This document shows, in pieces, positions 3,001 through 63,612 of a DNA stretch of 64,000 nt (within the stretch, counting starts at the first letter, position 1; every line of letters starts with the position of its first letter). The stretch spans positions 62,001 to 126,000 of the forward strand of contig NIVC01000194.1 of assembly GCA_002269645.1 (NCBI GenBank). The letters are read 5' to 3'. A program made the position numbers and the translations under genes. The notes beneath the pieces were generated by a model, which worked only from the letters and a program-made list of their open reading frames with translations, was not told the origin of the DNA and did no database searches. This DNA comes from Macrostomum lignano. Lineage: Eukaryota.

Positions 3001-6000
3001 GCTTGCTTTGGCAGGTGTGTAGGTTGCAACCTAGGGTGTGTAGCTTGCTTTGGCGTGTGTAGCTTGCTTTGGCAGGTGTGTAGGTTGCAACCTAGGGTGT
3101 GTAGCTTGCTTTGGCAGGTGTGTAGGTTGCAACCTAGGGTGTGTAGCTTGCTTTGGCAGGTGTGTAGGTTGCAACCTAGGGTGTGTAGCTTGCTTTGGCA
3201 GGTGTGTAGGTTGCAACCTAGGGTGTGTAGCTTGCTTTGGCAGGTGTGTAGGTTGCAACCTAGGGTGTGTAGCTTGCTTTGGCAGGTGTGTAGGTTGCAA
3301 CCTAGGGTGTGTAGCTTGCTTTGGCAGGTGTGTAGGTTGCAACCTAGGGTGTGTAGCTTGCTTTGGCAGGTGTGTAGGTTGCAACCTAGGGTGTGTAGCT
3401 TGCTTTGGCAGGTGTGTAGGTTGCAACCTAGGGTGTGTAGCTTGCTTTGGCAGGTGTGTAGGTTGCAACCTAGGGTGTGTAGCTTGCTTTGGCAGGTGTG
3501 TAGGTTGCAACCTAGGGTGTGTAGCTTGCTTTGGCAGGTGTGTAGGTTGCAACCTAGGGTGTGTAGCTTGCTTTGGCAGGTGTGTAGGTTGCAACCTAGG
3601 GTGTGTAGCTTGCTTTGGCAGGTGTGTAGGTTGCAACCTAGGGTGTGTAGCTTGCTTTGGCAGGTGTGTAGGTTGCAACCTAGGGTGTGTAGCTTGCTTT
3701 GGCAGGTGTGTAGGTTGCAACCTAGGGTGTGTAGCTTGCTTTGGCAGGTGTGTAGGTTGCAACCTAGGGTGTGTAGCTTGCTTTGGCAGGTGTGTAGGTT
3801 GCAACCTAGGGTGTGTAGCTTGCTTTGGTGTGTAGCTTGCTTTGGCAGGTGTGTAGGTTGCAACCTAGGGTGTGTAGCTTGCTTTGGCAGGTGTGTAGGT
3901 TGCAACCTAGGGTGTGTAGCTTGCTTTGGCAGGTGTGTAGGTTGCAACCTAGGGTGTGTAGCTTGCTTTGGCAGGTGTGTAGGTTGCAACCTAGGGTGTG
4001 TAGCTTGCTTTGGCAGGTGTCTAGGTTGCAACCTAGGGTGTGTAGCTTGCTTTGGCAGGTGTGTAGGTTGCAACCTAGGGTGTGTAGCTTGCTTTGGCAG
4101 GTGTGTAGGTTGCAACCTAGGGTGTGTAGCTAGGTGTGTAGGTTGCAACCTAGGGTGTGTAGCTTGCTTTGGCGGTGTGTAGGTTGCAACCTAGGGTGTG
4201 TAGCTTGCTTTGGCAGGTGTGTAGGTTGCAACCTAGGGTGTGTAGCTTGCTTTGGCAGGTGTGTAGGTTGCAACCTAGGGTGTGTAGCTTGCTTTGGCAG
4301 GTGTGTAGGTTGCAACCTAGGGTGTGTAGGTTGCAACCTAGGGTGTGTAGGTTGCTTTGGCGGGTGTGTAGCTTGCTTTGGCAGGTGTGTAGGTTGCTTT
4401 GGAGGGTGTGTAGCTTGCTTTGGCAGGTGTGTAGGTTGCAACCTAGGGTGTGTAGCTTGCTTTGGCAGGTGTGTAGGTTGCAACCTAGGGTGTGTAGCTT
4501 GCTTTGGCAGGTGTGTAGGTTGCAACCTAGGGTGTGTAGCTTGCTTTGGCAGGTGTGTAGGTTGCAACCTAGGGTGTGTAGCTTGCTTTGGCAGGTGTGT
4601 AGGTTGCAACCTAGGGTGTGTAGCTTGCTTTGGCAGGTGTGTAGGTTGCAACCTAGGGTGTGTAGCTTGCTTTGGCAGGTGTGTAGGTTGCAACCTAGGG
4701 TGTGTAGCTTGCTTTGGCAGGTGTCTAGGTTGCAACCTAGGGTGTGTAGCTTGCTTTGGCAGGTGTGTAGGTTGCAACCTAGGGTGTGTAGCTTGCTTTG
4801 GCAGGTGTGTAGGTTGCAACCTAGGGTGTGTAGCTTGCTTTGGCAGGTGTGTAGGTTGCAACCTAGGGTGTGTAGCTTGCTTTGGCAGGTGTGTAGGTTG
4901 CAACCTAGGGTGTGTAGCTTGCTTTGGCAGGTGTGTAGGTTGCAACCTAGGGTGTGTAGCTTGCTTTGGCAGGTGTGTAGGTTGCAACCTAGGGTGTGTA
5001 GCTTGCTTTGGCAGGTGTGTAGGTTGCAACCTAGGGTGTGTAGCTTGCTTTGGCAGGTGTGTAGGTTGCAACCTAGGGTGTGTAGCTTGCTTTGGCAGGT
5101 GTGTAGGTTGCAACCTAGGGTGTGTAGCTTGCTTTGGCAGGTGTCTAGGTTGCAACCTAGGGTGTGTAGCTTGCTTTGGCAGGTGTGTAGGTTGCAACCT
5201 AGGGTGTGTAGCTTGCTTTGGCAGGTGTGTAGGTTGCAACCTAGGGTGTGTAGCTTGCTTTGGCAGGTGTGTAGGTTGCAACCTAGGGTGTGTAGCTTGC
5301 TTTGGCAGGTGTGTAGGTTGCAACCTAGGGTGTGTAGCTTGCTTTGGCAGGTGTGTAGGTTGCAACCTAGGGTGTGTAGCTTGCTTTGGCAGGTGTGTAG
5401 GTTGCAACCTAGGGTGTGTAGCTTGCTTTGGCAGGTGTGTAGGTTGCAACCTAGGGTGTGTAGCTTGCTTTGGCAGGTGTCTAGGTTGCAACCTAGGGTG
5501 TGTAGCTTGCTTTGGCAGGTGTGTAGGTTGCAACCTAGGGTGTGTAGCTTGCTTTGGCAGGTGTGTAGGTTGCAACCTAGGGTGTGTAGCTTGCTTTGGC
5601 AGGTGTGTAGGTTGCAACCTAGGGTGTGTAGCTTGCTTTGGCGGTGTGTAGCTTGCTTTGGCAGGTGTGTAGGTTGCAACCTAGGGTGTGTAGCTTGCTT
5701 TGGCAGGTGTGTAGGTTGCTGGGTGTGTAGCTTGCTTTGGCAGGTGTGTAGGTTGCAACCTAGGGTGTGTAGCTTGCTTTGGCAGGTGTGTAGGTTGCAA
5801 CCTAGGGTGTGTAGCTTGCTTTGGCAGGTGTGTAGGTTGCAACCTAGGGTGTGTAGCTTGCTTTGGCAGGTGTCTAGGTTGCAACCTAGGGTGTGTAGCT
5901 TGCTTTGGCAGGTGTGTAGGTTGCAACCTAGGGTGTGTAGCTTGCTTTGGCAGGTGTCTAGGTTGCAACCTAGGGTGTGTAGCTTGCTTTGGCAGGTGTG

Positions 6001-9000
6001 TAGGTTGCAACCTAGGGTGTGTAGCTTGCTTTGGCAGGTGTGTAGGTTGCAACCTAGGGTGTGTAGCTTGCTTTGGCAGGTGTGTAGGTTGCAACCTAGG
6101 GTGTGTAGCTTGCTTTGGCAGGTGTCTAGGTTGCAACCTAGGGTGTGTAGCTTGCTTTGGCAGGTGTGTAGGTTGCAACCTAGGGTGTGTAGCTTGCTTT
6201 GGCAGGTGTGTAGGTTGCAACCTAGGGTGTGTAGCTTGCTTTGGCAGGTGTGTAGGTTGCAACCTAGGGTGTGTAGCTTGCTTTGGCAGGTGTGTAGGTT
6301 GCAACCTAGGGTGTGTAGCTTGCTTTGGCGGGTGTGTAGCTTGCTTTGGCAGGTGTGTAGGTTGCAACCTAGGGTGTGTAGCTTGCTTTGGCAGGTGTGT
6401 AGGTTGCAACCTAGGGTGTGTAGCTTGCTTTGGCAGGTGTGTAGGTTGCAACCTAGGGTGTGTAGCTTGCTTTGGCGGGTGTGTAGCTTGCTTTGGCAGG
6501 TGTGTAGGTTGCAACCTAGGGTGTGTAGCTTGCTTTGGCAGGTGTGTAGGTTGCAACCTAGGGTGTGTAGCTTGCTTTGGCGGGTGTGTAGCTTGCTTTG
6601 GCAGGTGTGTAGGTTGCAACCTAGGGTGTGTAGCTTGCTTTGGCAGGTGTGTAGGTTGCAACCTAGGGTGTGTAGCTTGCTTTGGCAGGTGTGTAGGTTG
6701 CAACCTAGGGTGTGTAGCTTGCTTTGGCAGGTGTCTAGGTTGCAACCTAGGGTGTGTAGCTTGCTTTGGCAGGTGTGTAGGTTGCAACCTAGGGTGTGTA
6801 GCTTGCTTTGGCAGGTGTGTAGGTTGCAACCTAGGGTGTGTAGCTTGCTTTGGCAGGTGTGTAGGTTGCAACCTAGGGTGTGTAGCTTGCTTTGGCAGGT
6901 GTCTAGGTTGCAACCTAGGGTGTGTAGCTTGCTTTGGCAGGTGTCTAGGTTGCAACCTAGGGTGTGTAGCTTGCTTTGGCAGGTGTCTAGGTTGCAACCT
7001 AGGGTGTGTAGCTTGCTTTGGCAGGTGTGTAGGTTGCAACCTAGGGTGTGTAGCTTGCTTTGGCAGGTGTGTAGGTTGCAACCTAGGGTGTGTAGCTTGC
7101 TTTGGCAGGTGTGTAGGTTGCAACCTAGGGTGTGTAGCTTGCTTTGGCAGGTGTGTAGGTTGCAACCTAGGGTGTGTAGCTTGCTTTGGCAGGTGTCTAG
7201 GTTGCAACCTAGGGTGTGTAGCTTGCTTTGGCAGGTGTGTAGGTTGCAACCTAGGGTGTGTAGCTTGCTTTGGCAGGTGTGTAGGTTGCAACCTAGGGTG
7301 TGTAGCTTGCTTTGGCAGGTGTGTAGGTTGCAACCTAGGGTGTGTAGCTTGCTTTGGCAGGTGTCTAGGTTGCAACCTAGGGTGTGTAGCTTGCTTTGGC
7401 AGGTGTCTAGGTTGCAACCTAGGGTGTGTAGCTTGCTTTGGCAGGTGTGTAGGTTGCAACCTAGGGTGTGTAGCTTGCTTTGGCAGGTGTGTAGGTTGCA
7501 ACCTAGGGTGTGTAGCTTGCTTTGGCAGGTGTCTAGGTTGCAACCTAGGGTGTGTAGCTTGCTTTGGCAGGTGTGTAGGTTGCAACCTAGGGTGTGTAGC
7601 TTGCTTTGGCAGGTGTCTAGGTTGCAACCTAGGGTGTGTAGCTTGCTTTGGCAGGTGTGTAGGTTGCAACCTAGGGTGTGTAGCTTGCTTTGGCAGGTGT
7701 GTAGGTTGCAACCTAGGGTGTGTAGCTTGCTTTGGCAGGTGTCTAGGTTGCAACCTAGGGTGTGTAGCTTGCTTTGGCAGGTGTGTAGGTTGCAACCTAG
7801 GGTGTGTAGCTTGCTTTGGCAGGTGTGTAGGTTGCAACCTAGGGTGTGTAGCTTGCTTTGGCAGGTGTGTAGGTTGCAACCTAGGGTGTGTAGCTTGCTT
7901 TGGCGGGTGTGTAGCTTGCTTTGGCAGGTGTCTAGGTTGCAACCTAGGGTGTGTAGCTTGCTTTGGCAGGTGTGTAGGTTGCAACCTAGGGTGTGTAGCT
8001 TGCTTTGGCAGGTGTGTAGGTTGCAACCTAGGGTGTGTAGCTTGCTTTGGCAGGTGTGTAGGTTGCAACCTAGGGTGTGTAGCTTGCTTTGGCAGGTGTG
8101 TAGGTTGCAACCTAGGGTGTGTAGCTTGCTTTGGCAGGTGTCTAGGTTGCAACCTAGGGTGTGTAGCTTGCTTTGGCAGGTGTGTAGGTTGCAACCTAGG
8201 GTGTGTAGCTTGCTTTGGCAGGTGTGTAGGTTGCAACCTAGGGTGTGTAGCTTGCTTTGGCAGGTGTGTAGGTTGCAACCTAGGGTGTGTAGCTTGCTTT
8301 GTCGGGTGTGTAGCTTGCTTTGGCAGGTGTGTAGGTTGCAACCTAGGGTGTGTAGCTTGCTTTGGCAGGTGTGTAGCTTGCTTTGGCGGGTGTGTAGCTT
8401 GCTTTGGCAGGTGTGTAGGTTGCAACCTAGGGTGTGTAGCTTGCTTTGGCAGGTGTGTAGGTTGCAACCTAGGGTGTGTAGCTTGCTTTGGCAGGTGTGT
8501 AGGTTGCAACCTAGGGTGTGTAGCTTGCTTTGGCAGGTGTGTAGGTTGCAACCTAGGGTGTGTAGCTTGCTTTGGCAGGTGTCTAGGTTGCAACCTAGGG
8601 TGTGTAGCTTGCTTTGGCAGGTGTGTAGGTTGCAACCTAGGGTGTGTAGCTTGCTTTGGCAGGTGTAGGTTGCAACCTAGGGTGTGTAGCTTGCTTTGGC
8701 AGGTGTGTAGGTTGCAACCTAGGGTGTGTAGCTTGCTTTGGCAGGTGTGTAGGTTGCAACCTAGGGTGTGTAGCTTGCTTTGGCAGGTGTGTAGGTTGCA
8801 ACCTAGGGTGTGTAGCTTGCTTTGGCAGGTGTCTAGGTTGCAACCTAGGGTGTGTAGCTTGCTTTGGCAGGTGTGTAGGTTGCAACCTAGGGTGTGTAGC
8901 TTGCTTTGGCAGGTGTGTAGGTTGCAACCTAGGGTGTGTAGCTTGCTTTGGCAGGTGTGTAGGTTGCAACCTAGGGTGTGTAGCTTGCTTTGGCAGGTGT

Positions 9001-11840
9001 GTAGGTTGCAACCTAGGGTGTGTAGCTTGCTTTGGCGGTGTGTAGCTTGCTTTGGCAGGTGTGTAGGTTGCAACCTAGGGTGTGTAGCTTGCTTTGGCAG
9101 GTGTGTAGGTTGCAACCTAGGGTGTGTAGCTTGCTTTGGCAGGTGTGTAGGTTGCAACCTAGGGTGTGTAGCTTGCTTTGGCGGGTGTGTAGCTTGCTTT
9201 GGCAGGTGTGTAGGTTGCAACCTAGGGTGTGTAGCTTGCTTTGGCAGGTGTGTAGGTTGCAACCTAGGGTGTGTAGCTTGCTTTGGCGGGTGTGTAGCTT
9301 GCTTTGGCAGGTGTGTAGGTTGCAACCTAGGGTGTGTAGCTTGCTTTGGCAGGTGTGTAGGTTGCAACCTAGGGTGTGTAGCTTGCTTTGGCAGGTGTGT
9401 AGGTTGCAACCTAGGGTGTGTAGCTTGCTTTGGCAGGTGTCTAGGTTGCAACCTAGGGTGTGTAGCTTGCTTTGGCAGGTGTGTAGGTTGCAACCTAGGG
9501 TGTGTAGCTTGCTTTGGCAGGTGTGTAGGTTGCAACCTAGGGTGTGTAGCTTGCTTTGGCAGGTGTGTAGGTTGCAACCTAGGGTGTGTAGCTTGCTTTG
9601 GCAGGTGTCTAGGTTGCAACCTAGGGTGTGTAGCTTGCTTTGGCAGGTGTGTAGGTTGCAACCTAGGGTGTGTAGCTTGCTTTGGCAGGTGTCTAGGTTG
9701 CAACCTAGGGTGTGTAGCTTGCTTTGGCAGGTGTGTAGGTTGCAACCTAGGGTGTGTAGCTTGCTTTGGCAGGTGTGTAGGTTGCAACCTAGGGTGTGTA
9801 GCTTGCTTTGGCAGGTGTCTAGGTTGCAACCTAGGGTGTGTAGCTTGCTTTGGCAGGTGTGTAGGTTGCAACCTAGGGTGTGTAGCTTGCTTTGGCAGGT
9901 GTCTAGGTTGCAACCTAGGGTGTGTAGCTTGCTTTGGCAGGTGTGTAGGTTGCAACCTAGGGTGTGTAGCTTGCTTTGGCAGGTGTGTAGGTTGCAACCT
10001 AGGGTGTGTAGCTTGCTTTGGCAGGTGTGTAGGTTGCAACCTAGGGTGTGTAGCTTGCTTTGGCAGGTGTCTAGGTTGCAACCTAGGGTGTGTAGCTTGC
10101 TTTGGCAGGTGTCTAGGTTGCAACCTAGGGTGTGTAGCTTGCTTTGGCAGGTGTGTAGGTTGCAACCTAGGGTGTGTAGCTTGCTTTGGCAGGTGTGTAG
10201 GTTGCAACCTAGGGTGTGTAGCTTGCTTTGGCAGGTGTCTAGGTTGCAACCTAGGGTGTGTAGCTTGCTTTGGCAGGTGTGTAGGTTGCAACCTAGGGTG
10301 TGTAGCTTGCTTTGGCAGGTGTCTAGGTTGCAACCTAGGGTGTGTAGCTTGCTTTGGCAGGTGTGTAGGTTGCAACCTAGGGTGTGTAGCTTGCTTTGGC
10401 AGGTGTGTAGGTTGCAACCTAGGGTGTGTAGCTTGCTTTGGCAGGTGTCTAGGTTGCAACCTAGGGTGTGTAGCTTGCTTTGGCAGGTGTGTAGGTTGCA
10501 ACCTAGGGTGTGTAGCTTGCTTTGGCAGGTGTGTAGGTTGCAACCTAGGGTGTGTAGCTTGCTTTGGCAGGTGTGTAGGTTGCAACCTAGGGTGTGTAGC
10601 TTGCTTTGGCAGGTGTGTAGGTTGCAACCTAGGGTGTGTAGCTTGCTTTGGCAGGTGTGTAGGTTGCAACCTAGGGTGTGTAGCTTGCTTTGGCAGGTGT
10701 GTAGGTTGCAACCTAGGGTGTGTAGCTTGCTTTGGCAGGTGTGTAGGTTGCAACCTAGGGTGTGTAGCTTGCTTTGGCAGGTGTCTAGGTTGCAACCTAG
10801 GGTGTGTAGCTTGCTTTGGCAGGTGTGTAGGTTGCAACCTAGGGTGTGTAGCTTGCTTTGGCAGGTGTGTAGGTTGCAACCTAGGGTGTGTAGCTTGCTT
10901 TGGCAGGTGTGTAGGTTGCAACCTAGGGTGTGTAGCTTGCTTTGGCGGGTGTGTAGCTTGCTTTGGCGGGTGTGTAGCTTGCAACCTAGGGTGTGTAGCT
11001 TGCTTTGGCGGGTGTCTAGGTTGCAACCTAGGGTGTGTAGCTTGCTTTGGCAGGTGTCTAGGTTGCAACCTAGGGTGTGTAGCTTGCTTTGGCGGTGTGT
11101 AGCTTGCTTGTGGCGGTGTGTAGGTTGCAACCTAGGGTGTGTAGCTTGCTTTGGCAGGTGTCTAGGTTGCAACCTAGGGTGTGTAGCTTGCTTTGGCAGG
11201 TGTCTAGGTTGCAACCTAGGGTGTGTAGCTTGCTTTGGCAGGTGTGTAGGTTGCAACCTAGGGTGTGTAGCTTGCTTTGGCAGGTGTGTAGGTTGCTTTG
11301 GGTGTGTAGCTTGCTTTGGCAGGTGTGTAGGTTGCTAGGGTGTGTAGCTTGCTTTGGCAGGTGTGTAGGTTGCAACCTAGGGTGTGTAGCTTGCTTTGGC
11401 AGGTGTGTAGGTTGCAACCTAGGGTGTGTAGCTTGCTTTGGCAGGTGTGTAGGTTGCAACCTAGGGTGTGTAGCTTGCTTTGGCAGGTGTGTAGGTTGCA
11501 ACCTAGGGTGTGTAGCTTGCTTTGGCAGGTGTGTAGGTTGCAACCTAGGGTGTGTAGCTTGCTTTGGCAGGTGTCTAGGTTGCAACCTAGGGTGTGTAGC
11601 TTGCTTTGGCAGGTGTGTAGGTTGCAACCTAGGGTGTGTAGCTTGCTTTGGCAGGTGTGTAGGTTGCAACCTAGGGTGTGTAGCTTGCTTTGGCAGGTGT
11701 CTAGGTTGCAACCTAGGGTGTGTAGCTTGCTTTGGCAGGTGTCTAGGTTGCAACCTAGGGTGTGTAGCTTGCTTTGGCAGGTGTCTAGGTTGCAACCTAG
11801 GGTGTGTAGCTTGCTTTGGCGGGTGTGTAAGTTGCTTTGT
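1..11840. repeat. 42-bp tandem satellite (dimer of two related 21-mers), about 280 units, presumably intronic in PINCH; continues left of the window
   Basis: Unit GTGTGTAGCTTGCTTTGGCAG + GTGTGTAGGTTGCAACCTAGG. It contains the 14-bp palindrome TAGGTTGCAACCTA. Occasional half-unit deletions and a G>C variant are visible. Copy number is array length divided by 42. Confidence 0.98.
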
Positions 11841-19859: not shown

Positions 19860-20924
19860 TCCTGCCCCCTCTCATTCTCCCCTGCCCTCCCCTCTCATTC
19901 TCCCCTGCTCTCCTCCTCTCATTCTCCCCTGCTCTCCTCCTCTCATTCTCCCCTGCTCTCCTCCTCTCATTCTCCCCTGCTCTCCTCCTCTCATTCTCCC
20001 CTGCCCTCCCCTCTCATTTCCCCTGCCCTCCCCTCTCATTCTCCCCTGCTCTCCTCCTCTCATTCTCCCCTGCTCTCCTCCTCTCATTCTCCCCTGCTCT
20101 CCTCCTCTCATTCTCCCCTGCCCTCCCCTCTCATTCTCCCCTGCCCTCCCCTCTCATTCTCCCCTGCCCTCCCCTCTCATTCTCCCCTGCCCTCCCCTCT
20201 CATACTCCCCTGCCCTCTCCCTCTCATTCTTCCCTGCCCTTTCCCTCTCATTCTTCCCTGCCCTCTCCCTCTCATTCTTCCCTGCCCTCCCCTCTCATTC
20301 TCCTCTGCTCTCCTCCTCTCATTATCCCCTGCCCTCTCCCTCTCATTCTTCCCTGCCCTCCCCTCTCATTCTTCCCCACCCTCCCGCTCATTCTTCCCTG
20401 CTCTCCCCTCTCATTCTTCCCCGCCCTCCCCTCATTCTTCCCCGCCCTCCCCTCTCATTCTTCCCCGCCCTCCCTTCATTCTTCCCCGCCCTCCCTCTCA
20501 TTCTTCCCCGCCCTCCCCTCATTCTTCCCCGCCCTCCCCTCTCATTCTTCCCCACCCTCCCCTCTCATTCTTCCCCACCCTCCCTCTCATTCTTCCCCAC
20601 CCTCCCCTCTCTTCTTCCCCACCCTCCCCTCTCATTCTCCCTGCCCTCCCCTTTCATTCTCCCCTGCCCTCCCCTCTCATTCTTCCCTGCCCTCCCCTCT
20701 CATTCTCCCCGCCCTCCCCTCTCATTCTCCCCTGCCCTCCCCTCTCATTCTTCGATCCCTGCCCTCCCCTCTCATTCTCCCCTGCCCTCCCCTCTCATTC
20801 TTCGATCCCTGACCTCCCCTCTCATTTTCCCCTGCCTTCCCCTCTCATTCTTCCCCACCCTCCTCTCTCTTCTTCCCCGCCCTCCCCTCTCATTCTTCCC
20901 CGCCTTCGCTCTCATTCTCCCCTG
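19860..20924. repeat. ~23-bp polypyrimidine/polypurine minisatellite
   Basis: Unit like CTCATTCTCCCCTGCCCTCCCCT; about 1 kb that is almost entirely C/T on the + strand. Confidence 0.9.
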
Positions 20925-21883
20925 CAGTGCGAATCGTGCGATATACAGACTTACCTTAGGCGGAACTGCAGAGTCAAGCGGGAATCTGCCTCAGCTTTCA
21001 AAGCTTCAGTTTTGCACGGGGGATCAATTTAGCGGCAGACCGGGCACTAAAGTAGAAAAATCAGGTAAAGTGAATTGTCTCTATCAGTGCAATAAAAATT
21101 TACAATCGCCTGTTCTGCTTGCAACGCATGGCCGCAACTCCAATTCGACTTAGAGAGGCTTGCCCTGCCATATACATAAGGACCTGCAGGCCAATGGGCG
21201 GCCGTTGCCATCCATGCAGCAGCAAGTTGCCCCCACAGTAACAGCAGAAAATGTCGCGAAATAAACAGAGCCCGTGTTTTCGCCCGCTGGCTGCGCGTTG
21301 CCGACCAGCGATGGGGCTGGGGAAGCTGGAGTGAAGGGCTGGGTAAGAGAAAGTTTATGCGCTGCGGGGGGGGTGCCCGGGGAAAACCACGATGGCAGCG
21401 CAGATGCGATCGCAGGCAGGGCGCAACTTCCCAAATAAAATCTCGGGACCCTCGCAAAGCGCTGGCGACTGGCGAGGCACAGCCGCGATGTGGCCCATGG
21501 CCCGGCCAAATAAGGAATTCCCGGAATCCCACAGCTGTCAAAGCCTAAACTGCAGCAGGTTGCAGCTAAACTGACAGCAATTCCCGCGAGGCCTTTGAAG
21601 TTGCACTTCTGTGCATGAAGTTCCCAATTGACTCAGGATCTCTGCGATTTGTTTTGGGACGAGTCAGGGGCATTCTTGTGATGGGTCAGCGATGATGTGT
21701 GACATACATGTAGTGACACCATGAACTTTGTGATAGTTTGCGTGCACTGAGTTGCTGACTCACTAGCATTGGCGATTGTTATTGACCAGCTTAGTGATTT
21801 GAATCAGCCAAGCTCTCAAGCGGGCACTTTCTTTCTCACTCCTAGAGTTCAACACTACTGCCTCAGTCATTAAAGTTAGCACA

Positions 21884-24013
21884 ATATGCAGGGTGGGACA
21901 GGGATGATATGCAGGGTGGATCAGGGATGATATGCAGGGTGGGTCATGGATTATATGCAGGGTGGGTCAGGGATGATATGCAGGGTGGGTCAGGGATGAT
22001 ATGCAGGATGGGTCAGGGATTATATGCAGGGTGGGTCAGGGATGATATGCAGGGTGGGACAGGGATGATATGCAGGGTGGGTCAGGGATGATATGCAGGG
22101 TGGGTCAGGGATTATATGCAGGGTGGGACAGGGATGATATGCAGGGTGGGTCAGGGATGATATGCAGGGTGGGTCAGGGATTATATCCAGGGTGGGACAG
22201 GGATTATATGCAGTATGGGTCAGGGATTATATGCAGGGTGGGTCAGGGATGATATGCAGGGTGGGTCAGGGATTATATGCAGGGTGGAACAGGGATGATA
22301 TGCAGGGTGGGTCATGGATTATATGCAGGATGGGTCAGGGATGATATGCAGGATTGGTCAGGGATTATATGCAGGGTGGGTCAGGGATGATATGCAGGGT
22401 GGGTCAGGGATGATATGCAGGGTGGGTCAGGGATGATATGCAGGGTGGGTCAGGGATTATATGCAGGGTGGGACAGGGATTATATGCAGGGTGGGTCATG
22501 GATTATATGCAGTATGGGTCAGGGATTATATGAAGGGTGGGTCAGGGATTATATGCAAGATGGGTCAGGGATGATATGAAGGGTGGGTCATGGATTATAT
22601 GCAGGGTGGGTCAGGGATGATATGCAGGGTGGGTCAGGGATGATATGCAGGGTGGGTCAGGGATTATATGCAGTATGGGTCATGGATTATATGCAGGGTG
22701 GTCAGGGATTATATGCAGGGTGGGACAGGGATTATATGCAGGGTGGGTCATGGATTATATGCAGTATGGGTCAGGGATTATATGAAGGGTGGGTCAGGGA
22801 TTATATGCAAGATGGGTCAGGGATGATATGAAGGGTGGGTCATGGATTATATGCAGGGTGGGTCAGGGATGATATGCAGGGTGGGTCATGGATTATATGC
22901 AGGGTGGGTCAGGGATGATATGAAGGGTGGGTCATGGATTATATGCAGGGTGGGTCAGGGATGATATGCAGGGTGGGTCAGGGATGATATGCAGGGTGGG
23001 TCATGGATTATATGCAGGGTGGGTCAGGGATGATATGCAGGGTGGGTCAGGGATGATATGCAGGATGGGTCAGGGATGATATGCAGGGTGGGACAGGGAT
23101 GATATGCAGGGTGGGTCAGGGATGATATGCAGGGTGGGTCAGGGATTATATGCAGGGTGGGACAGGGATGATATGCAGGGTGGGTCAGGGATGATATGCA
23201 GGGTGGGTCAGGGATTATATCCAGGGTGGGACAGGGATTATATGCAGTATGGGTCAGGGATTATATGCAGGGTGGGTCAGGGATGATATGCAGGGTGGGT
23301 CAGGGATTATATGCAGGGTGGAACAGGGATGATATGCAGGGTGGGTCATGGATTATATGCAGGATGGGTCAGGGATGATATGCAGGATTGGTCAGGGATT
23401 ATATGCAGGGTGGGTCAGGGATGATATGCAGGGTGGGTCAGGGATGATATGCAGGGTGGGTCAGGGATGATATGCAGGGTGGGTCAGGGATTATATGCAG
23501 GGTGGGACAGGGATTATATGCAGGGTGGGTCATGGATTATATGCAGTATGGGTCATGGATTATATGCAGGGTGGGTCAGGGATTATATGCAGGGTGGGAC
23601 AGGGATTATATGCAGGGTGGGTCATGGATTATATGCAGTATGGGTCAGGGATTATATGAAGGGTGGGTCAGGGATTATATGCAAGATGGGTCAGGGATGA
23701 TATGAAGGGTGGGTCATGGATTATATGCAGGGTGGGTCAGGGATGATATGCAGGGTGGGTCAGGGATGATATGCAGGATGGGTCAGGGATGATATGCAGG
23801 ATGGGTCAGGTATGATATGAAATGTGGGTCAGGGATTATATGAAGGGTGGGTCAGGGATTATATGCAGGGTGGGTCAGGGATGATATGAAATGTGGGTCA
23901 GGGATGATATGCAGGATGGGTCAGGGATGATATGCAGGATGGGTCAGGTATGATATGAAATGTGGGTCAGGGATTATATGAAGGGTGGGTCAGGGATTAT
24001 ATGCAGGGTGGGT
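21884..24013. repeat. 23-bp G-rich minisatellite with an internal ~1034-bp higher-order duplication
   Basis: Unit GATGATATGCAGGGTGGGTCAGG. Identical variant strings recur at an offset of 1034 (ORF-track peptides at 22070/23104 and 22162/23196 are identical). Confidence 0.92.
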
Positions 24014-24632
24014 AAGGGTGGGCCAGAGACGATTTCTAGGGTGAGTCGGTAGATGATTTCCTGTAAAGCACGACAAAACTTGCGCTATTCAGGGCAGCGG
24101 TTCACCCCAATTTCCATAGTAAATCACAAAGCAAACGCAAAAGACCACTGCGCATTGTTGTGCCGGTCAGGGCGGCGTCCAGTTCTCCCAGAGCGGCTGT
24201 TCGGAGACTCGAGCAAAAACTTGTAGAAGCAAGTTATAAATTATAAAAAATAGAATTATAATTAGCGAATTGCAGTTCAGCGAAAATGCGGCATTCAGAA
24301 TTTGAATTGCATTATTAAGAGTAAAAATAAGATTGAATTAAATGAGCAGAAAGGCAAACTGTGCCAATAAAAAAAGTGCAGAAAATTTCAACAGAGCGTT
24401 GCGCAGAAATGCGGCAATAAAAACAGGTTTAGTTTCTGGTGGGGGATAAAAAAGCGGTCATTGTTTTAAATTAACAATTAACTAATATTTAGAAATGCAG
24501 CGATGCGGTGCGTGCGGCCTACGGTAACTCGGCTACAGTATGGGAAGAGGTTGGGGAGCAGTGAAGGACAGTGCACTTTATTAGTGTGACGGGGAGTTCA
24601 TATCAATCAAAGTTCACCAAGCTGCCGGGGGC

Positions 24633-30899
<6,267 letters not shown>

Positions 30900-40397: not shown

Positions 40398-41877
40398 CTA
40401 CTTATTAGGGCAGTACATGATCAGCCGAACATCCGGCTTGGCCGCCTTCGGATCAGTCGGGTGCAGCGTGGAGGCGCCGTTGCGGTGCACGGCCAGCACA
40501 ACGCCCCGGCACGGCTGACCGCGGATGTTCGAGGCGGACGCAATCGAGATCACGTTGCACTGCCTGCCCTCGACGTTGTAGCCGCCCGCCAGCGACTGTT
40601 CGATGCCCTCGTTCCGGACGCAGATCTTCATGTTGCTGCGCTTCATAAAGCTGATGGCCTCGCAGACATCTGCGGAGAAAGGATGCGAGCAACTTCGATT
40701 CCTACTGAAACAGATGTTTCCTAGTTAAGCCCTCCCTATGTTGGCGCCCTGTTACGCTGATCCTGTTGGCTGCTGGTTGCTGGACGCGATGAGTGCGTAG
40801 AATGAGAAAGAACTTGAGATTTTTTCTGAGTCCCCCTCAATAATAACTCAAACAGTTGTCTCTAAAGACTCAAAAACCTTCGGTCTCGCCCTCGTCGAAG
40901 TCCTCAAGCGGGTCGGCCTGCAGCGTGTGGTCACCTAGTCGAGACGGCTGCCTGGCCAGCAGGCGCATGATGCCGTCCCGGTGGCAGATGGTGCAGGGCC
41001 GGACCACCTGCTCCAGGTCCAGCAGGTTGCCTCGCTTCAGGCTGAGAGACGCGTTGCACATCAGGTGAATGCCGTTTGCTCGGGCGGCAAGCGGCAGGTA
41101 CTTGAAGACGGACTTGAACTCGCGGTACAGGGAGGCCGTGAATGAAGTTGTCACTGCGGAGGCATTGGTAGCAAGTTCGTAGAAAAAGTTCTCATGAAAT
41201 TCTACAAATGTAAATTTGGTCCCGCTTGAAACACAGCAATAACAAAAGCAGCGCGCCCTTAGAGTCGAATAATCATGGTTTTTCGGTGCATTCCCACACA
41301 ATATGCTTCTTACTAAGTACGCTCGTAGCAGTATCATAAGGTGCATCAGCATACCACATCAAATTGAATTCCGGATACATAGGGGATATTAAGTCCTGTT
41401 CCCCCTGACACAGCCCAGGCAGGTGCTTCACAACTCACGCAGGTCCAGCAGCCCCATGTCCGCGGCGCAGTGCTCGCACTCGCTGGCGCCCCGCAGCAGC
41501 AGGATGTGCTTCGGGTAGACCACCTTGAAAATGAGCAGCAGAACGAAGACGTTCGTCTGAATCTTGTCGTCGATCGTGGCAAGGTAGTCACCGAGGAACA
41601 CGTAGCAGACGTCGCTTGGCCAGCCGTAGGTGCGGAAGATCGCCTGCAGGCTCTCGATGCTGCCGTGCAGGCTGCCGACCACCCGGCAGTCGCCGCGCAC
41701 GTCAATCACGGAGGCCTCGGTCCTGAGGATGTTGCACACCCGCTTGACGATCATGTAGAGCTCGTTGCTGGTGAGGCTGGTGATGCCGCCCTGGGCGAAG
41801 CGCTCGACGACCAGGGCAATCCAGTTGCGCGGCAGGCCGAACTCGATCAGCGACTGCGCCCGTAGCTTCACGTCCAT
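40398..41877 (-). CDS. PP1-like PPP-family protein with degenerate catalytic motifs (putative pseudophosphatase), 3 exons, 328 aa
   Basis: Exons 41877-41439, 41153-40878 and 40669-40398 total 987 nt with GT-AG introns (phases 1/1) and no internal stop. It is collinear with PP1 motifs: VVGSLHG (GDIHG), YVFLGDYLATI (GDYVDRG), FKVVYPKHILLLRGASE (KYPENFFLLRGNHE), VFKYLPLAA, MCNAS (HGG), ICVRNE (ICRAH), ASASNI (SAPNY). Confidence 0.85.
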
Positions 41878-42162
41878 GCTGAGGCCTTTAGTTTGAGAAA
41901 CTTTTTGTGATCTTATTTGAGTCTGCTTCATTTAAATAAAGCAGCTGAGGCATTCTAGAAACTTTCCTAAAGTTCTATGGTAAGTTTTATGCATTTTAAG
42001 TTGACATTTGATAGTTTCTAAGGTGGGTCTGATGGCTTGGACAGCTGCTGGTAGGGGCGATTGAGCTCAACAACGGGAGCAGGATAAATTTTACTACATG
42101 CAAGATTTTTGCCGACTGCCTCCCTCCCAGCTCTTGCATCCGCAATATCGCACTGCAGCCAG

Positions 42163-43169
42163 CATGGCAACCAGCTTCATCGCTACTCCAGTCTATGTTC
42201 TGCCCCGCAGCGGCCTGTCTGGCCCAGCTGGTCCTCTGCGAGAGCCTGCCGGGCTCCTGGCACCGCCTGAGCAGCCCGCAGTGCCTGCCTGAGAATCTGA
42301 CAGTGCGGGCGGCCCAGACTCCGAGAGGAATCAGCGAGTGCCTCATGGAGGCTGGCTCGAGCGGCCTGCAGGTGGCCCAGTTCGACTCGTACAGCCGCGA
42401 CTGCTGATCGCTCTTCCAATTCACCGCAGTGTGCCACCTGATCGATGGACTCGCTGCTGCGGAGAGCTCGCAGCCCCGCCGCTGTGCCGCATTCGCCAAT
42501 GACAGAGCTGCGTTCTTCATCACTTTGAGCAGTGATGGGTGTGGTCTCGAAGCTGAGGGCCGCCTTGGTGATGAGCGCCAGCAGGAGCAACTTGGTGTGC
42601 GGCCAGACGGAGCAGTGGATGTCGGAGAATGTGGAGTGGAGCAGCGAGGGAGCCAAGCTCGACGGAGTGTCGTCCAAGATGTGGCTGGAGAACGTGGAGT
42701 TCGCGAACCTGCAGCAGGGACTCACGTGGCTGGTCAGGCTCAAGCGGGAGATCGGGGATGCACCAATTCTTGAGAGCTACGACTGCACCGCTTGGAGTGG
42801 CTTTGGAGCCGCCTTCTGGGACGGAGCTTCAAGAGGCCTGTTCGGCGTCAGGATCGCTTCGAGTTATTCTTCTTACCAAACCGCACTGGAAACAAACTTT
42901 TTGACGCGAATTCGTTCGTGGAAGTCGGCCTGACGTCGGCGTCAGTCTCGAGCCGAACTTTCTTCTCCAACGGAGGCTTCGTGCCGCGGGAAAAGGGGAC
43001 TGTGATTGGCTCATATACTGCATCGGGTATTCCCAACTGCACCAGTCTGAGACTCGGATTTCAACGTGGCGACTCGCGAATGCTGAACGGCACGGTGCAG
43101 GCAGTGGCTGTCATGAACGACTCAATGACCGAGGCTGAGATCCGCAGCTTCTTCGGTCTGGTGCGCTGA
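42163..43169 (+). pseudogene. disrupted secreted-protein gene: signal-like N-terminus, PAN/apple-like Cys module and LamG/concanavalin-like domain
   Basis: GC3-rich fragments: MFCPAAACLAQLVLCES...ISECLMEAGSSGLQVAQFDSYSRDC*SLF; ...NVEWSSEGAKLDGVSSKMWLENVEFANLQQGLTWLVRLK...APILES; RFELFFLPNRTG...LNGTVQAVAVMNDSMTEAEIRSFF*. Joining them needs a TGA at 42405-42407 and at least two frameshifts. Domain calls are pattern impressions. Confidence 0.5.
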
Positions 43170-43509: not shown

Positions 43510-44451
43510 CAGTCAGTCAGTCAGTCAGTCAGTCAGTCAGTCAGTCAGTCAGTCAGTCAGTCAGTCAGTCAGTCAGTCAGTCAGTCAGTCAGTCAGTCAG
43601 TCAGTCAGTCAGTCAGTCAGTCAGTCAGTCAGTCAGTCAGTTAATCAGTCAGTCAGTCAGTCAGTTAGTCAGTCAGTCAGTCAGTCAGTCAGTCAGTCAG
43701 TCAGTCAGTCAGTCAGTCAGTCAGTCACTCACTCACTCACTCAAGTCAGTCAGTCAGTCAGTCAGTCAGTCACCCACTCACTCAAGTCAGTCAGTCAGTC
43801 AGTCAGTCAGTCACCCACTCACTCAAGTCAGTCAGTCAGTCAGTCAGTCAGTCACCCACTCACTCAAGTCAGTCAGTCAGTCAGTCAGTCAGTCACCCAC
43901 TCACTCAAGTCAGTCAGTCAGTCAGTCAGTCACCCACTCACTCAAGTCAGTCAGTCACCCACTCACTCAAGTCAATCAGTCAGTCAGTCAGTCAGTCACT
44001 CACTCACTCACTCACTCACTCAAGTCAGTCAGTCAGTCAGTCAGTCAGTCAGTCACCCACTCACTCAAGTCAGTCAGTCAGTCAGTCAGTCACCCACTCA
44101 CTCAAGTCAGTCAGTCAGTCACCCACTCACTCAAGTCAGTCAGTCAGTCAGTCAGTCACCCACTCACTCAAGTCAGTCAGTCAGTCAGTCAGTCACCCAC
44201 TCACTCAAGTCAGTCAGTCAGTCAGTCAGTCAGTCACTCACTCACTCAAGTCAGTCAGTCAGTCAGTCAGTCAGTCAGTCAGTCAGTCAGTCAGTCAGTC
44301 AGTCAGTCAGTCACTCAAGTCAGTCAGTCAGTCAGTCACTCACTCACTCAAGTCAGTCAGTCAGTCAGTCAGTCAGTCACTCACTCAAGTCAGTCAGTCA
44401 GTCAGTCAGTCAGTCAGTCAGTCACCCACTCACTCAAGTCAGTCAGTCAGT
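43510..44451. repeat. (AGTC)n microsatellite with interspersed ACTC/ACCC variant blocks
   Basis: Direct reading. Confidence 0.95.

Positions 44452-48146: not shown

Positions 48147-63612
<15,466 letters not shown>

What the first reader, a model, noticed from the sequence alone, without database searches (positions are those of the whole stretch)
40398..41877. Full-length, intact PP1-like gene that has lost most catalytic residues: candidate PPP pseudophosphatase
Seen: an open 328-aa, three-exon frame with canonical splice sites and strong GC3 bias, about the length of PP1. Motif changes relative to PP1: GDIHG>GSLHG, GDYVDRG>GDYLATI, GNHE>GASE, HGG>NAS, RAH>RNE, SAPNY>SASNI. Known: in PP1, D64, H66, D92, N124, H173 and H248 bind the metals, and R96, H125 and R221 act in catalysis. 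Here four of six metal ligands (D64, N124, H173, H248) plus R96 and H125 appear substituted. Pseudoenzymes are much less commonly described in the PPP family than among PTPs. Inference: a selected non-catalytic scaffold or decoy that could sequester RVxF-type PP1 regulators; a germline or sperm role is conceivable by analogy with divergent PP1 paralogs.
Basis: partly seen in the sequence, partly recalled or inferred. Interest (0 to 1): 0.72.

Follow-up and report, generated by a model that had tools for sequence, protein, structure and literature searches.

The report
Flatworm dead PPP phosphatase gene
This is a real, spliced and evolutionarily conserved gene of the flatworm Macrostomum lignano whose protein keeps the fold of a PP1/calcineurin-type phosphatase but has lost most catalytic residues, so it is a rare animal example of a "dead" phosphatase of this family, and its job is still unknown.

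Summary
On the minus strand, 41877-40398 encodes a three-exon, 328-aa protein. It is identical to the annotated Macrostomum lignano gene Mlig024376g2; that assembly's gene models were derived from RNA-seq.

The protein is a PPP-family homologue by sequence (Pfam Metallophos; PP1 E~5e-19) and by predicted fold (TM 0.7-0.8). Four of the six metal ligands are replaced, as are R96, D95 and the general acid H125.

It is not a decaying pseudogene. All three subgenome copies are intact, with dN/dS 0.08-0.16. A 41-43%-identical paralogue group (Mlig016765/Mlig023519) shares both intron positions and is even more degenerate, keeping one of the six ligands.

An exhaustive HMMER search of 1.8 billion proteins found no closer relative outside M. 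lignano.

"PP1-like" is only weakly favoured over calcineurin-like (86-90 against 81-83 bits). The RVxF-decoy idea is not supported: the groove residues are poorly kept, charge-reversed, and differ between the paralogues. A germline or sperm role could not be tested.

Best reading: a lineage-restricted PPP-type pseudophosphatase, maintained by selection, that acts by binding rather than catalysis. It is a new member of a rarely described kind. PfPPP8 of Plasmodium is the only experimentally characterised one; others are only predicted from sequence.

The parts
41439..41877 (-). Exon 1 (ATG at 41877-41875; aa 1-146 plus 1 nt). It encodes the N-terminal helices and the degenerate GDxHG, GDxVDRG and GNHE motifs.
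   Evidence: Identical to the annotated model P0156/P0158. Donor GTGAGT is conserved in all copies and in the paralogue.
41878..41904 (-). Annotated 5' UTR of the transcript-derived model. The in-frame codons KVSQTKGLS precede the Met in PAA88374.1.
   Evidence: The annotation method is described in PMC5730564.
41154..41438 (-). Intron 1 (285 nt, GTGAGT..CAG, phase 1, GC 0.44).
   Evidence: Same position and phase in the paralogue group B.
40878..41153 (-). Exon 2 (aa 147-239). It holds the HGG>NAS change and the conserved, acidic segment predicted to be disordered.
40670..40877 (-). Intron 2 (208 nt, GTTTTT..CAG, phase 1, GC 0.46).
40398..40669 (-). Exon 3 (aa 239-328 plus stop TAG at 40400-40398). 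It holds the RAH>RNE and SAPNY>SASNI changes.
41662..41676 (-). GSLHG (aa 68-72), the former GDxHG motif. D64 is replaced by S here, by N in copies g1 and g3, and by K in the paralogue. H66 is kept.
41572..41592 (-). GDYLATI (aa 96-102), the former GDxVDRG motif. D92 is kept (N in the paralogue); D95 and R96 are lost.
41449..41490 (-). GASECEHCAADMGL (aa 130-143), the former GNHE motif and the following helix. N124 is replaced by A and H125 by S. SECEHCAA.MGL is nearly invariant between the two paralogue groups.
41047..41055 (-). NAS (aa 180-182), the former HGG motif. H173 is replaced by N (C in the paralogue).
40888..40986 (-). aa 203-235. This segment replaces the PPP beta-hairpin and loop that carry W206, D208 and R221. 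It is acidic and predicted with low confidence, yet it keeps a conserved pattern (P216, R218, L219, T223, L224, D231, D233, E234, E236, E238) with the paralogue.
40608..40616 (-). RNE (aa 257-259), the former RAH motif. H248 is replaced by E (G in the paralogue by MAFFT).
   Evidence: read from the sequence.
40524..40538 (-). SASNI (aa 283-287), the former SAPNY motif. Y272 is replaced by I.
   Evidence: read from the sequence.

Best explanation
The gene is Macrostomum lignano Mlig024376 (subgenome copy g2). It encodes a stand-alone ~330-aa protein that keeps the PPP (PP1/calcineurin-type) metallophosphoesterase fold. It has lost the residues needed to hold the two-metal centre, bind phosphate and protonate the leaving group.

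Shown:
- The exon structure.
- Homology and predicted fold.
- Which catalytic residues are lost.
- Purifying selection on the coding sequence.
- An old paralogue with the same intron positions that is even more degenerate.
- Restriction of the family to M. lignano in very large sequence libraries.

Inferred:
- The protein has no metal-dependent phosphatase activity.
- It works by binding other proteins, as a scaffold, adaptor or competitor. The likely binding surfaces are those still conserved between the paralogues: the N-terminal half, the SECEHCAA.MGL helix that in PP1 lines the hydrophobic substrate groove, and a conserved acidic flexible segment that replaces the R221 loop.
- The binding partner is unknown, and the classical RVxF groove does not appear to be the conserved surface.
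For: 1. Gene model. Three exons with GT-AG introns give 328 aa. The product is identical to PAA88374.1 and A0A1I8GL19. The GenBank annotation of this assembly was built only from RNA-seq and transcriptome assemblies (PMC5730564). Composition switches sharply at the splice sites.

2. Homology and fold. Pfam Metallophos scores above its gathering cut-off. PP1 hits reach E~5e-19 with the single sequence and E~1e-23 with the family profile. The AlphaFold2 model has pLDDT 78.9 and pTM 0.81. Foldseek matches PPP catalytic domains at TM 0.7-0.8.

3. Catalytic loss. The metal ligands DHDNHH read SHDANE in the window copy (two kept). In paralogue group B only H66 is kept: KHNLC plus a sixth position that is G by MAFFT and a gap by hmmalign. 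R96, D95, H125 and Y272 are also replaced. The former catalytic positions differ between copies and paralogues (S/N/K at D64, A/L at N124, N/C at H173, E/G at H248); only 2 of 10 are identical against 41% overall. That points to relaxed constraint at exactly those positions.

4. Selection. Among the three subgenome copies dN/dS is 0.09, 0.08 and 0.16 (4N/14S, 2N/8S, 4N/8S). A binomial test against neutrality gives p from 3e-6 to 2e-3. dN is 0.15-0.30 of the divergence in flanks and introns (Fisher p from 3e-4 to 6e-3). The only indel in the coding sequence is 6 nt and in frame, whereas the flanks and introns carry many indels (tens to several hundred gapped columns per pair). Splice sites are conserved.

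5. Age. Paralogue group B is 41-43% identical with saturated dS (~1.5). It has the same two intron positions and phases and an intact ORF in two loci.

6. Distribution. In the exhaustive HMMER search only three representatives fall below 1e-30, all from M. lignano. The next hits are ordinary PPPs at ~1e-20 to 1e-25.
Against: - There is no direct biochemical, expression-site or interaction evidence. Transcription is inferred from the annotation method, and reads from three copies at least 95% identical cannot be assigned to this copy.
- The dN/dS values rest on only 10-18 substitutions per pair. The copies are subgenome or haplotype variants of a neopolyploid, and gene conversion is possible.
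- H66 and D92 (two of the three M1-site ligands) survive in this copy, so residual binding of a single metal cannot be excluded.
- One of the three group-B loci carries a 1-nt deletion in exon 2. This may be real decay or a homopolymer assembly error.
- No orthologue from another species was available, so long-term constraint rests on the within-genome paralogue comparison.
Confidence: 0.75

Rival explanations
1. A decoy for RVxF-type PP1 regulators. The dead domain would keep the PP1 RVxF groove and sequester PP1-interacting proteins, perhaps in the male germline.
For: The PPP fold is retained, including the C-terminal beta-sandwich that forms the groove in PP1. PP1-type proteins are marginally the best sequence match. 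The protein is a stand-alone domain of PP1 length.
Against: The aligned groove residues are poorly conserved: I169>H, L243>I, F257>V, R261>C, L289>G (C in copy g3), C291>S, F293>L. The acidic residues that receive the basic part of the motif are charge-reversed (D242>K, E287>R). Paralogue group B carries different residues at almost all these sites. The C-terminal half is the least constrained part of the family (26% identity against 47.5% in the N-terminal part). PP2A, which does not use RVxF, matches PP1 at these positions better than this protein does. Calcineurin scores almost as well as PP1. There are no expression data.
Confidence: 0.08
2. A recently inactivated gene on its way to becoming a pseudogene. 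The catalytic losses would then reflect relaxed selection on a redundant PPP duplicate in a neopolyploid genome.
For: The genome is neopolyploid with three paralogous subgenomes, so redundancy is high (PMC10733133). One group-B locus has a 1-nt deletion. dN/dS between the two intact B copies is 0.39 and not significantly below 1.
Against: All three copies of this gene and two of three B loci have intact ORFs and conserved splice sites. dN/dS is 0.08-0.16, significantly below 1. dN is 3-7 times lower than divergence in the neighbouring non-coding DNA. The only coding indel is in frame, while the flanks are full of indels. The catalytic losses predate a duplication with saturated dS, yet both lineages stayed open. 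A neighbouring 215-aa ORF is frame-shifted in this same copy, so the locus does accumulate such changes where it is unconstrained. GC3 of 0.89 is retained.
Confidence: 0.05
3. Still an enzyme, but with altered chemistry. It could be a mono-metal hydrolase using the surviving H66/D92 pair, or a new Cys/His-based site built from the conserved SECEHC motif.
For: H71 (PP1 H66) is invariant and D97 (PP1 D92) is kept in this group. C134, H136 and C137 in the SECEHC motif are invariant between paralogues that are only 41% identical. The fold around the former active site is predicted with high confidence.
Against: Group B also loses D92 (to N), so the putative mono-metal site is not conserved across the family. 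The phosphate-binding R96 is replaced and the R221 region is unalignable and predicted disordered in this gene. The general acid H125 and its partner D95 are all gone. Cys and His residues are not preferentially conserved: 4 of 13 Cys and 4 of 8 His, against 41% overall (counted from the alignment). No precedent for such chemistry is known in this fold (own knowledge).
Confidence: 0.08

Closest known systems
PP1 catalytic subunit (PPP1C; e.g. human PP1-alpha, PDB 3e7a, 1fjm; Chlamydomonas FAP15, 7n6g)
   Same: The same PPP metallophosphoesterase fold, as a stand-alone domain of ~330 aa. PP1 is the best or near-best sequence match (72 bits with the single sequence, 86-90 bits with the profile). 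Foldseek TM is 0.70-0.72 normalised to the query and about 0.8 normalised to the target. Core motifs such as LRG, LPLAA and the SA.N strand can still be recognised.
   Different: Only about 21-30% identical. Four of the six metal ligands are replaced, as are R96, D95, H125 and Y272. The loop carrying W206, D208 and R221 is replaced by an acidic, low-confidence segment. The RVxF groove residues are not kept. There is no PP1 C-terminal tail. The family is restricted to M. lignano in the libraries searched.
Calcineurin A (PP2B) catalytic domain
   Same: It scores almost as well as PP1 (63 against 72 bits with the single sequence; 81-83 against 86-90 bits with the profile). The profile alignment extends further into the C-terminal half (positions 45-289). 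Local strings such as YPK and EC.H resemble calcineurin (read directly from the alignment).
   Different: There is no CnB-binding helix, calmodulin-binding region or autoinhibitory region, because the protein ends with the catalytic domain. The catalytic losses are the same as listed for PP1.
PfPPP8 and apicomplexan homologues (PPP-type pseudophosphatases; PMC10317984)
   Same: A PPP-family domain with mutated metal-binding residues that has been retained in evolution. Its authors describe it as the first experimentally characterised PPP-type pseudophosphatase, with a structural or binding role.
   Different: It is not an orthologue, so the loss is independent. As reported, PfPPP8 has one core motif mutated (GDXXDRG to GNLINRG) and belongs to the Plasmodium basal complex. 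The flatworm protein has every motif degraded and comes from an animal. Its function is unknown.
Kinetoplastid kPPP and second PP2B cluster (predicted pseudophosphatases; PMC2175518)
   Same: Lineage-specific, long-branch PPP homologues with substitutions at catalytic residues, predicted from sequence alone.
   Different: They come from protists, are unrelated at the subfamily level, and have no demonstrated selection or function in that paper. Similar degenerate PPPs also appear among unnamed protist and metagenome proteins in the hit list: 22 of 152 hits lack at least one ligand.
PTP-fold pseudophosphatases (STYX, EGG-4/5, inactive myotubularins)
   Same: The concept is shared: a dead phosphatase domain that acts by binding, as a trap, scaffold or regulator of active paralogues. 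Several have germline roles, as cited in PMC2175518 and PMC10317984.
   Different: The fold and chemistry are entirely different (Cys-based). Those proteins usually keep the phosphate-binding pocket, whereas here the phosphate-binding R96 is replaced and the R221 region is unalignable and predicted disordered. A phospho-substrate trap is therefore unlikely.

Membership tests
PPP family (Pfam PF00149 Metallophos; PP1/PP2A/PP2B-type fold), evolutionary membership | Significant sequence similarity to the PPP catalytic domain | tested here: met
   Pfam scores 27.5 bits against a cut-off of 21.5. PDB PP1 hits reach E~5e-19, and the family profile reaches E~1e-23 to 1e-25. Note that paralogue B no longer hits Pfam at E<=0.1.
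PPP family (Pfam PF00149 Metallophos; PP1/PP2A/PP2B-type fold), evolutionary membership | PPP alpha/beta sandwich fold over the whole domain | tested here: met
   The AlphaFold2 model has pLDDT 78.9 and pTM 0.81. Foldseek against the PDB gives PP1, PP2A, PP2B and PP5 at E~1e-19 and TM 0.65-0.85. This is a prediction, not a solved structure.
Catalytically competent PPP phosphatase | Signature motifs GDxHG, GDxVDRG and GNHE | tested here: not met
   The motifs read GSLHG, GDYLATI and GASE. In the paralogue they read GKLHG, GNYLYVN and GLSE.
Catalytically competent PPP phosphatase | Six metal ligands (PP1 D64, H66, D92, N124, H173, H248) | tested here: not met
   Two of six are kept (H66, D92), giving the pattern SHDANE. 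In paralogue B only H66 is kept.
Catalytically competent PPP phosphatase | Phosphate-binding arginines R96 and R221 and the general acid pair H125/D95 | tested here: not met
   R96 is replaced by T or D depending on the alignment. D95 is replaced by A or I, and H125 by S. The R221 region cannot be aligned and is predicted with low confidence.
Catalytically competent PPP phosphatase | Metal-dependent phosphatase activity | not testable with these tools
   This needs recombinant protein, a pNPP or phosphopeptide assay, and metal analysis.
PP1 subfamily | Clearly closer to PP1 than to the other PPP subfamilies | tested here: inconclusive
   PP1 scores 72 against calcineurin 63 bits with the single sequence, and 86-90 against 81-83 bits with the profile. 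Foldseek does not separate the subfamilies. No named-reference phylogeny was built.
PP1 subfamily | RVxF-binding groove (I169, D242, L243, F257, R261, L289, C291, F293) conserved | tested here: not met
   The aligned residues are H, K, I, V, C, G/C, S, L. They differ again in paralogue B. The contact list comes from established PP1 structural knowledge. Alignment of this region is supported by the SA.N and terminal strands, but it was not checked on coordinates.
PP1 subfamily | Stand-alone ~300-330-aa catalytic domain without extra regulatory domains | tested here: met
   The protein is 328 aa and only the Metallophos domain is found.
Pseudophosphatase (pseudoenzyme) | Phosphatase fold with loss of essential catalytic residues | tested here: met
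Pseudophosphatase (pseudoenzyme) | Gene maintained by purifying selection (not a pseudogene) | tested here: met
   dN/dS is 0.08-0.16 among the three copies, p<=2e-3. dN is well below the non-coding divergence. ORFs and splice sites are intact in 5 of 6 loci. The counts are small.
Pseudophosphatase (pseudoenzyme) | Expressed as a spliced mRNA and as protein | tested here: inconclusive
   The public model has identical junctions and comes from an annotation based only on RNA-seq. No reads, copy-specific data or protein evidence could be examined.
Processed or decaying pseudogene | Frameshifts, premature stops, lost splice sites or loss of introns | tested here: not met
   None occurs in the window copy or in copies g1 and g3, and the introns are retained. 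The only such change is a single 1-nt deletion in one locus of the other paralogue.

The most novel reading that the evidence does not exclude
This would be the first animal PPP-type pseudophosphatase family. It arose in the Macrostomum lineage, then duplicated anciently and was retained on all subgenomes. It would act as a structural mimic of metal-free or immature PP1 (or of calcineurin), titrating conserved PPP biogenesis or regulatory factors, for example SDS22, inhibitor-2 or inhibitor-3-type proteins. Binding would go through the conserved N-terminal half, the former hydrophobic groove and a new acidic flexible segment, giving a lineage-specific layer of phosphatase control, possibly in the germline.
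Probability: 0.1. Interest if true: 0.7.

Novelty: new member of a known kind. Interest (0 to 1): 0.45.

Why it matters
Dead enzymes that act by binding are well known among kinases and tyrosine-type phosphatases. In the PPP Ser/Thr phosphatase family, one experimentally studied case was found (PfPPP8, 2023), alongside sequence-only predictions in protists.

This flatworm gene is a clean animal example. Nearly the whole active site is erased, the fold is kept, there are measurable signs of purifying selection, and an old paralogue shows the state has lasted a long time.

Macrostomum lignano has RNAi, in situ hybridisation and transgenesis, so the function of a PPP pseudoenzyme could be tested directly there. 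The public records name the protein only 'hypothetical protein' or 'protein-serine/threonine phosphatase'. The second name probably overstates its activity.

Tried and rejected

2. P0002, a 558-aa 'CRAL-TRIO' protein at 67% identity, looked like a paralogue. It is a frame-shifted, fused model of the same gene from an older assembly, and I ignored it.

3. I looked for data on where the gene is expressed.
- Full-text searches for Mlig024376, Mlig016765, Mlig023519, PAA88374 and A0A1I8GL19 found nothing.
- The supplements of PMC5816591, PMC7336406, PMC5730564 and PMC12896417 hold none of these IDs, and PMC8629364 has no supplement held.

4. I looked for transcript contigs. Exact-sequence look-ups returned only contigs of genome assembly GCA_002269645.1 and no RNA-derived contigs.

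5. I tried to resolve PP1 against calcineurin origin with single-sequence, profile and fold searches. It stays unresolved.

6. The profile search for orthologues in other flatworms or animals found none. The next hits are ordinary active PPPs from protists and nematodes.

7. dN/dS between the two paralogue groups (about 0.4) was discarded as evidence because dS is saturated at about 1.5.

8. I considered a new Cys/His site. Cys and His residues are not preferentially conserved, so this stays a low-probability rival.

Full report
**What is in the sequence.** The feature lies on the minus strand.
- Translating 41877-40398 gives three open segments joined by two GT-AG introns.
- Exon 1 is 41877-41439, exon 2 is 41153-40878 and exon 3 is 40669-40398, ending in TAG.
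- The donors are GTGAGT and GTTTTT, both acceptors are CAG, and both introns are phase 1.
- The product is 328 aa.
- Exons are 62-64% GC and introns 44-46%, with the switch exactly at the predicted junctions. GC3 is 0.89.

**Whose gene it is.**
- The protein is identical to PAA88374.1 (BOX15_Mlig024376g2) and UniRef A0A1I8GL19 of the free-living flatworm Macrostomum lignano.
- The window matches contig NIVC01000194.1 of assembly GCA_002269645.1 at 100% over the 21.5 kb retrieved.
- The GenBank annotation of this assembly was produced only from RNA-seq: StringTie/TACO plus a de novo transcriptome, with ORFs called by TransDecoder (PMC5730564).
- The public model carries 27 nt of in-frame 5' UTR ahead of the Met ('partial', KVSQTKGLS-M...), which is what a transcript-derived ORF looks like.
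- This is indirect but real evidence that a spliced mRNA with exactly these junctions exists. Reads cannot be assigned to one of the three near-identical copies from what I could access.

**Homology and fold.**
- Pfam Metallophos is hit above its gathering score (27.5 against 21.5 bits).
- The best solved relatives are PP1 catalytic subunits (E about 5e-19). With the single sequence only the N-terminal ~190 residues align.
- An AlphaFold2 model built on a 20-sequence alignment has mean pLDDT 78.9 and pTM 0.81.
- The only internal low-confidence stretch is residues 203-235 of the window protein (212-244 in P0001 numbering); the termini are also predicted with low confidence.
- Foldseek places the model on PPP catalytic domains over its full length, at TM 0.65-0.72 normalised to the query and up to about 0.85 normalised to the target.

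The fold is therefore retained.

**Catalytic residues.** Aligned with human PP1-alpha (numbering checked) and independently by hmmalign:

| PP1 residue | Window copy (g2) | Copies g1, g3 | Paralogue group B |
|---|---|---|---|
| D64 | S | N | K |
| H66 | kept | kept | kept |
| D92 | kept | kept | N |
| N124 | A | A | L |
| H173 | N | N | C |
| H248 | E | E | G (MAFFT; gap in hmmalign) |
| H125 (general acid) | S | S | S |
| D95 | lost | lost | lost |
| R96 | lost | lost | lost |
| Y272 | I | I | V |

- For D95 and R96 the aligned residue depends on a small indel in GDYL-ATIDD.
- The segment that in PPPs carries W206, D208 and R221 is replaced by an acidic stretch predicted as flexible.
- Two of six metal ligands survive here and one of six in the paralogue. 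A two-metal phosphoesterase centre cannot be formed.

**Pseudogene or maintained gene?**
- The Mlig_3_7 assembly contains three copies of this gene: g1, g2 (the window) and g3. They lie in syntenic contexts.
- That count matches the three paralogous subgenomes described for this neopolyploid (PMC10733133).
- All three copies have intact ORFs and identical splice sites.

| Pair | Nonsyn / syn changes | dN/dS | Binomial p vs neutrality | dN as fraction of non-coding divergence | Fisher p |
|---|---|---|---|---|---|
| g1-g2 | 4 / 14 | 0.09 | 3e-6 | 0.30 | 6e-3 |
| g1-g3 | 2 / 8 | 0.08 | 4e-4 | 0.15 | 6e-4 |
| g2-g3 | 4 / 8 | 0.16 | 2e-3 | 0.23 | 3e-4 |

(Values. 'Non-coding' means the adjacent introns and flanks.)

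- The flanks and introns contain many gapped alignment columns, tens to several hundred per pair. The coding sequence has a single 6-nt in-frame indel.
- A neighbouring 215-aa ORF that is intact in the g3 locus is frame-shifted in the window copy. The region does accumulate such lesions where nothing prevents them.
- The numbers of substitutions are small, and the copies may exchange sequence, but every test points the same way.

**An old, equally dead paralogue.**
- The exhaustive HMMER search of 1.84 billion cluster representatives found only three entries below 1e-30.
- These are this gene, a broken older model of it (P0002), and P0006 (Mlig016765g1), whose cluster also holds Mlig023519g1 and g2. 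All are from M. lignano.
- Group B is 41-43% identical and has the same two intron positions and phases. Its dS against group A is saturated at about 1.5.
- It is further degraded (GKLHG, GNYLYVN, GLSE) and no longer hits Pfam.
- The loss of catalysis therefore predates an old duplication, and both lineages kept open, spliced genes afterwards.
- One of the three B loci has a 1-nt deletion in a GGG run of exon 2. I cannot tell whether this is decay or a long-read homopolymer error.

**What is still conserved.**
- Identity between the groups is 47.5% over residues 1-200 and 26% over 201-328.
- The best-kept blocks are CRVVG.LHG, AIFR.YGWPS, YVFLG.YL, FK.VYP, LRG.SECEHCAA.MGL.D, FKYLPLAA and SLSL.RG.
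- The SECEHCAA.MGL block replaces the GNHE motif and the helix that in PP1 lines the hydrophobic substrate groove.
- The low-confidence acidic segment nevertheless keeps a pattern (P, RL, TL, D.DE.E.E).
- The former catalytic positions differ between the groups at 8 of 10 sites.
- Constraint has therefore moved away from the active-site chemistry to other surfaces. That is what is expected of a protein that now works by binding.

- 'PP1-like' is only weakly favoured. PP1-type chains score 72 against calcineurin 63 bits with the single sequence, and 86-90 against 81-83 bits with the family profile.
- PP2A and PP5 fall below the listed hits, and fold comparison does not separate the subfamilies.
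- The architecture (domain only, ~330 aa) is PP1-like, but the PP1 tail is absent.
- The RVxF-decoy idea fails at the residue level. At the PP1 groove positions the protein has H, K, I, V, C, G, S and L. D242 and E287 are reversed to K and R. L289 differs even between the subgenome copies (G or C). Group B has other residues again.
- That region belongs to the least constrained half of the protein.
- A phospho-substrate 'trap' is also unlikely, because the phosphate-binding R96 is replaced and the R221 region is unalignable and predicted disordered.
- I found no data on where the gene is expressed, so the germline suggestion remains untested.

**Comparison with what is known.**
- PPP-type pseudophosphatases are rarely described. 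The PfPPP8 paper calls its protein the first identified and first experimentally characterised one (PMC10317984).
- The TriTryp phosphatome paper had earlier predicted kinetoplastid PPP and PP2B-like pseudophosphatases from sequence (PMC2175518).
- In my own hit list, 22 of 152 other PPP homologues lack at least one metal ligand and 10 lack three or more. The ten I looked up come from metagenomes or protist transcriptomes.
- Degenerate PPP domains are therefore not unique in sequence space, although my query biases that list towards them.
- None of them is close to the flatworm family, which is an independent loss.
- I found no paper that mentions these flatworm genes. Public names are 'hypothetical protein' and an automatic 'protein-serine/threonine phosphatase'.

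**Verdict.**
- The core of the interpretation, a PPP pseudophosphatase maintained by selection, is well supported by computation.
- The PP1 assignment is soft, and the proposed RVxF-decoy mechanism is not supported.
- The most likely mode of action is non-catalytic binding through the conserved N-terminal half, the former-groove surface and the acidic segment, with an unknown partner.
- It is a new member of a known but sparsely populated kind, in an animal where it can be tested.
- Interest is moderate.

Noticed in passing
window 20-11839: A satellite array of about 12 kb with a 21/42/84-bp unit (for example GGTGTGTAGCTTGCTTTGGCAGGTGTGTAGGTTGCAACCTAG). It has about 197 copies of the 42-mer at 95% identity and a strong, uniform G/T strand skew (GC skew about +0.45).
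   Followed up: partly
window 21884-24018; 53931-56541; 43510-44451; 61849-62619; 19866-20925; 26250-26948: The window is packed with long minisatellites: 23 bp x93, 23 bp x114, (CAGT)n x231, a 14-bp unit x55 at 100% identity, and others.
   Followed up: no
window ~48147-51904 and beyond (+ strand); window 30398-30899 and lower (- strand): Two neighbouring genes are taken from the public annotation. One is a SHIP-like inositol 5-phosphatase (SH2, Exo_endo_phos2, C2_SHIP, SAM) transcribed divergently from the PPP gene. The other is an MCM5-like helicase gene downstream. A 33-bp tandem repeat at 48476-49148 inside the SHIP gene range aligns in many registers with the g3 locus, so its copy number may differ between the subgenome copies.
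   Followed up: partly
window 42535-43166 (+ strand): A 215-aa ORF with no Pfam match is annotated as a gene in the g3 locus (L001 8722-9369, minus). In the window copy it is frame-shifted near 42900 (tblastn frames 1 then 3), and the look-up for this contig lists no gene there.
   Followed up: partly
window 41929-41931 (- strand): There is an in-frame ATG 18 codons upstream of the annotated start (MKQTQIRSQKVSQTKGLS-MDVK...). It lies outside the annotated transcript start at 41904. If transcription starts further upstream, the protein would be 346 aa.
   Followed up: no
L006 about 6306 (NIVC01004358.1, Mlig023519g1): The third locus of the paralogue group has a 1-nt deletion in a GGG run of exon 2 (CTGGGAT>CTGGAT), giving the truncated 250-aa model PAA47705.1. 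Exons 1 and 3 are 100% identical to Mlig016765g1. This is either a very recent frameshift or a homopolymer assembly error.
   Followed up: partly
window 41672 (codon 69); L001 and L003 equivalents: The residue at the former metal ligand D64 differs between the subgenome copies: S in g2 and N in g1 and g3. Copy g1 also has an in-frame 6-nt insertion (AG-SA-GYN) in exon 3.
   Followed up: yes
proteins P0010, P0017, P0026, P0064, P0088, P0105 (hits): Several unnamed PPP homologues from metagenomes and protist transcriptomes have lost 4-6 of the six metal ligands. Candidate PPP pseudophosphatases may be more widespread in microbial eukaryotes than the literature suggests.
   Followed up: partly
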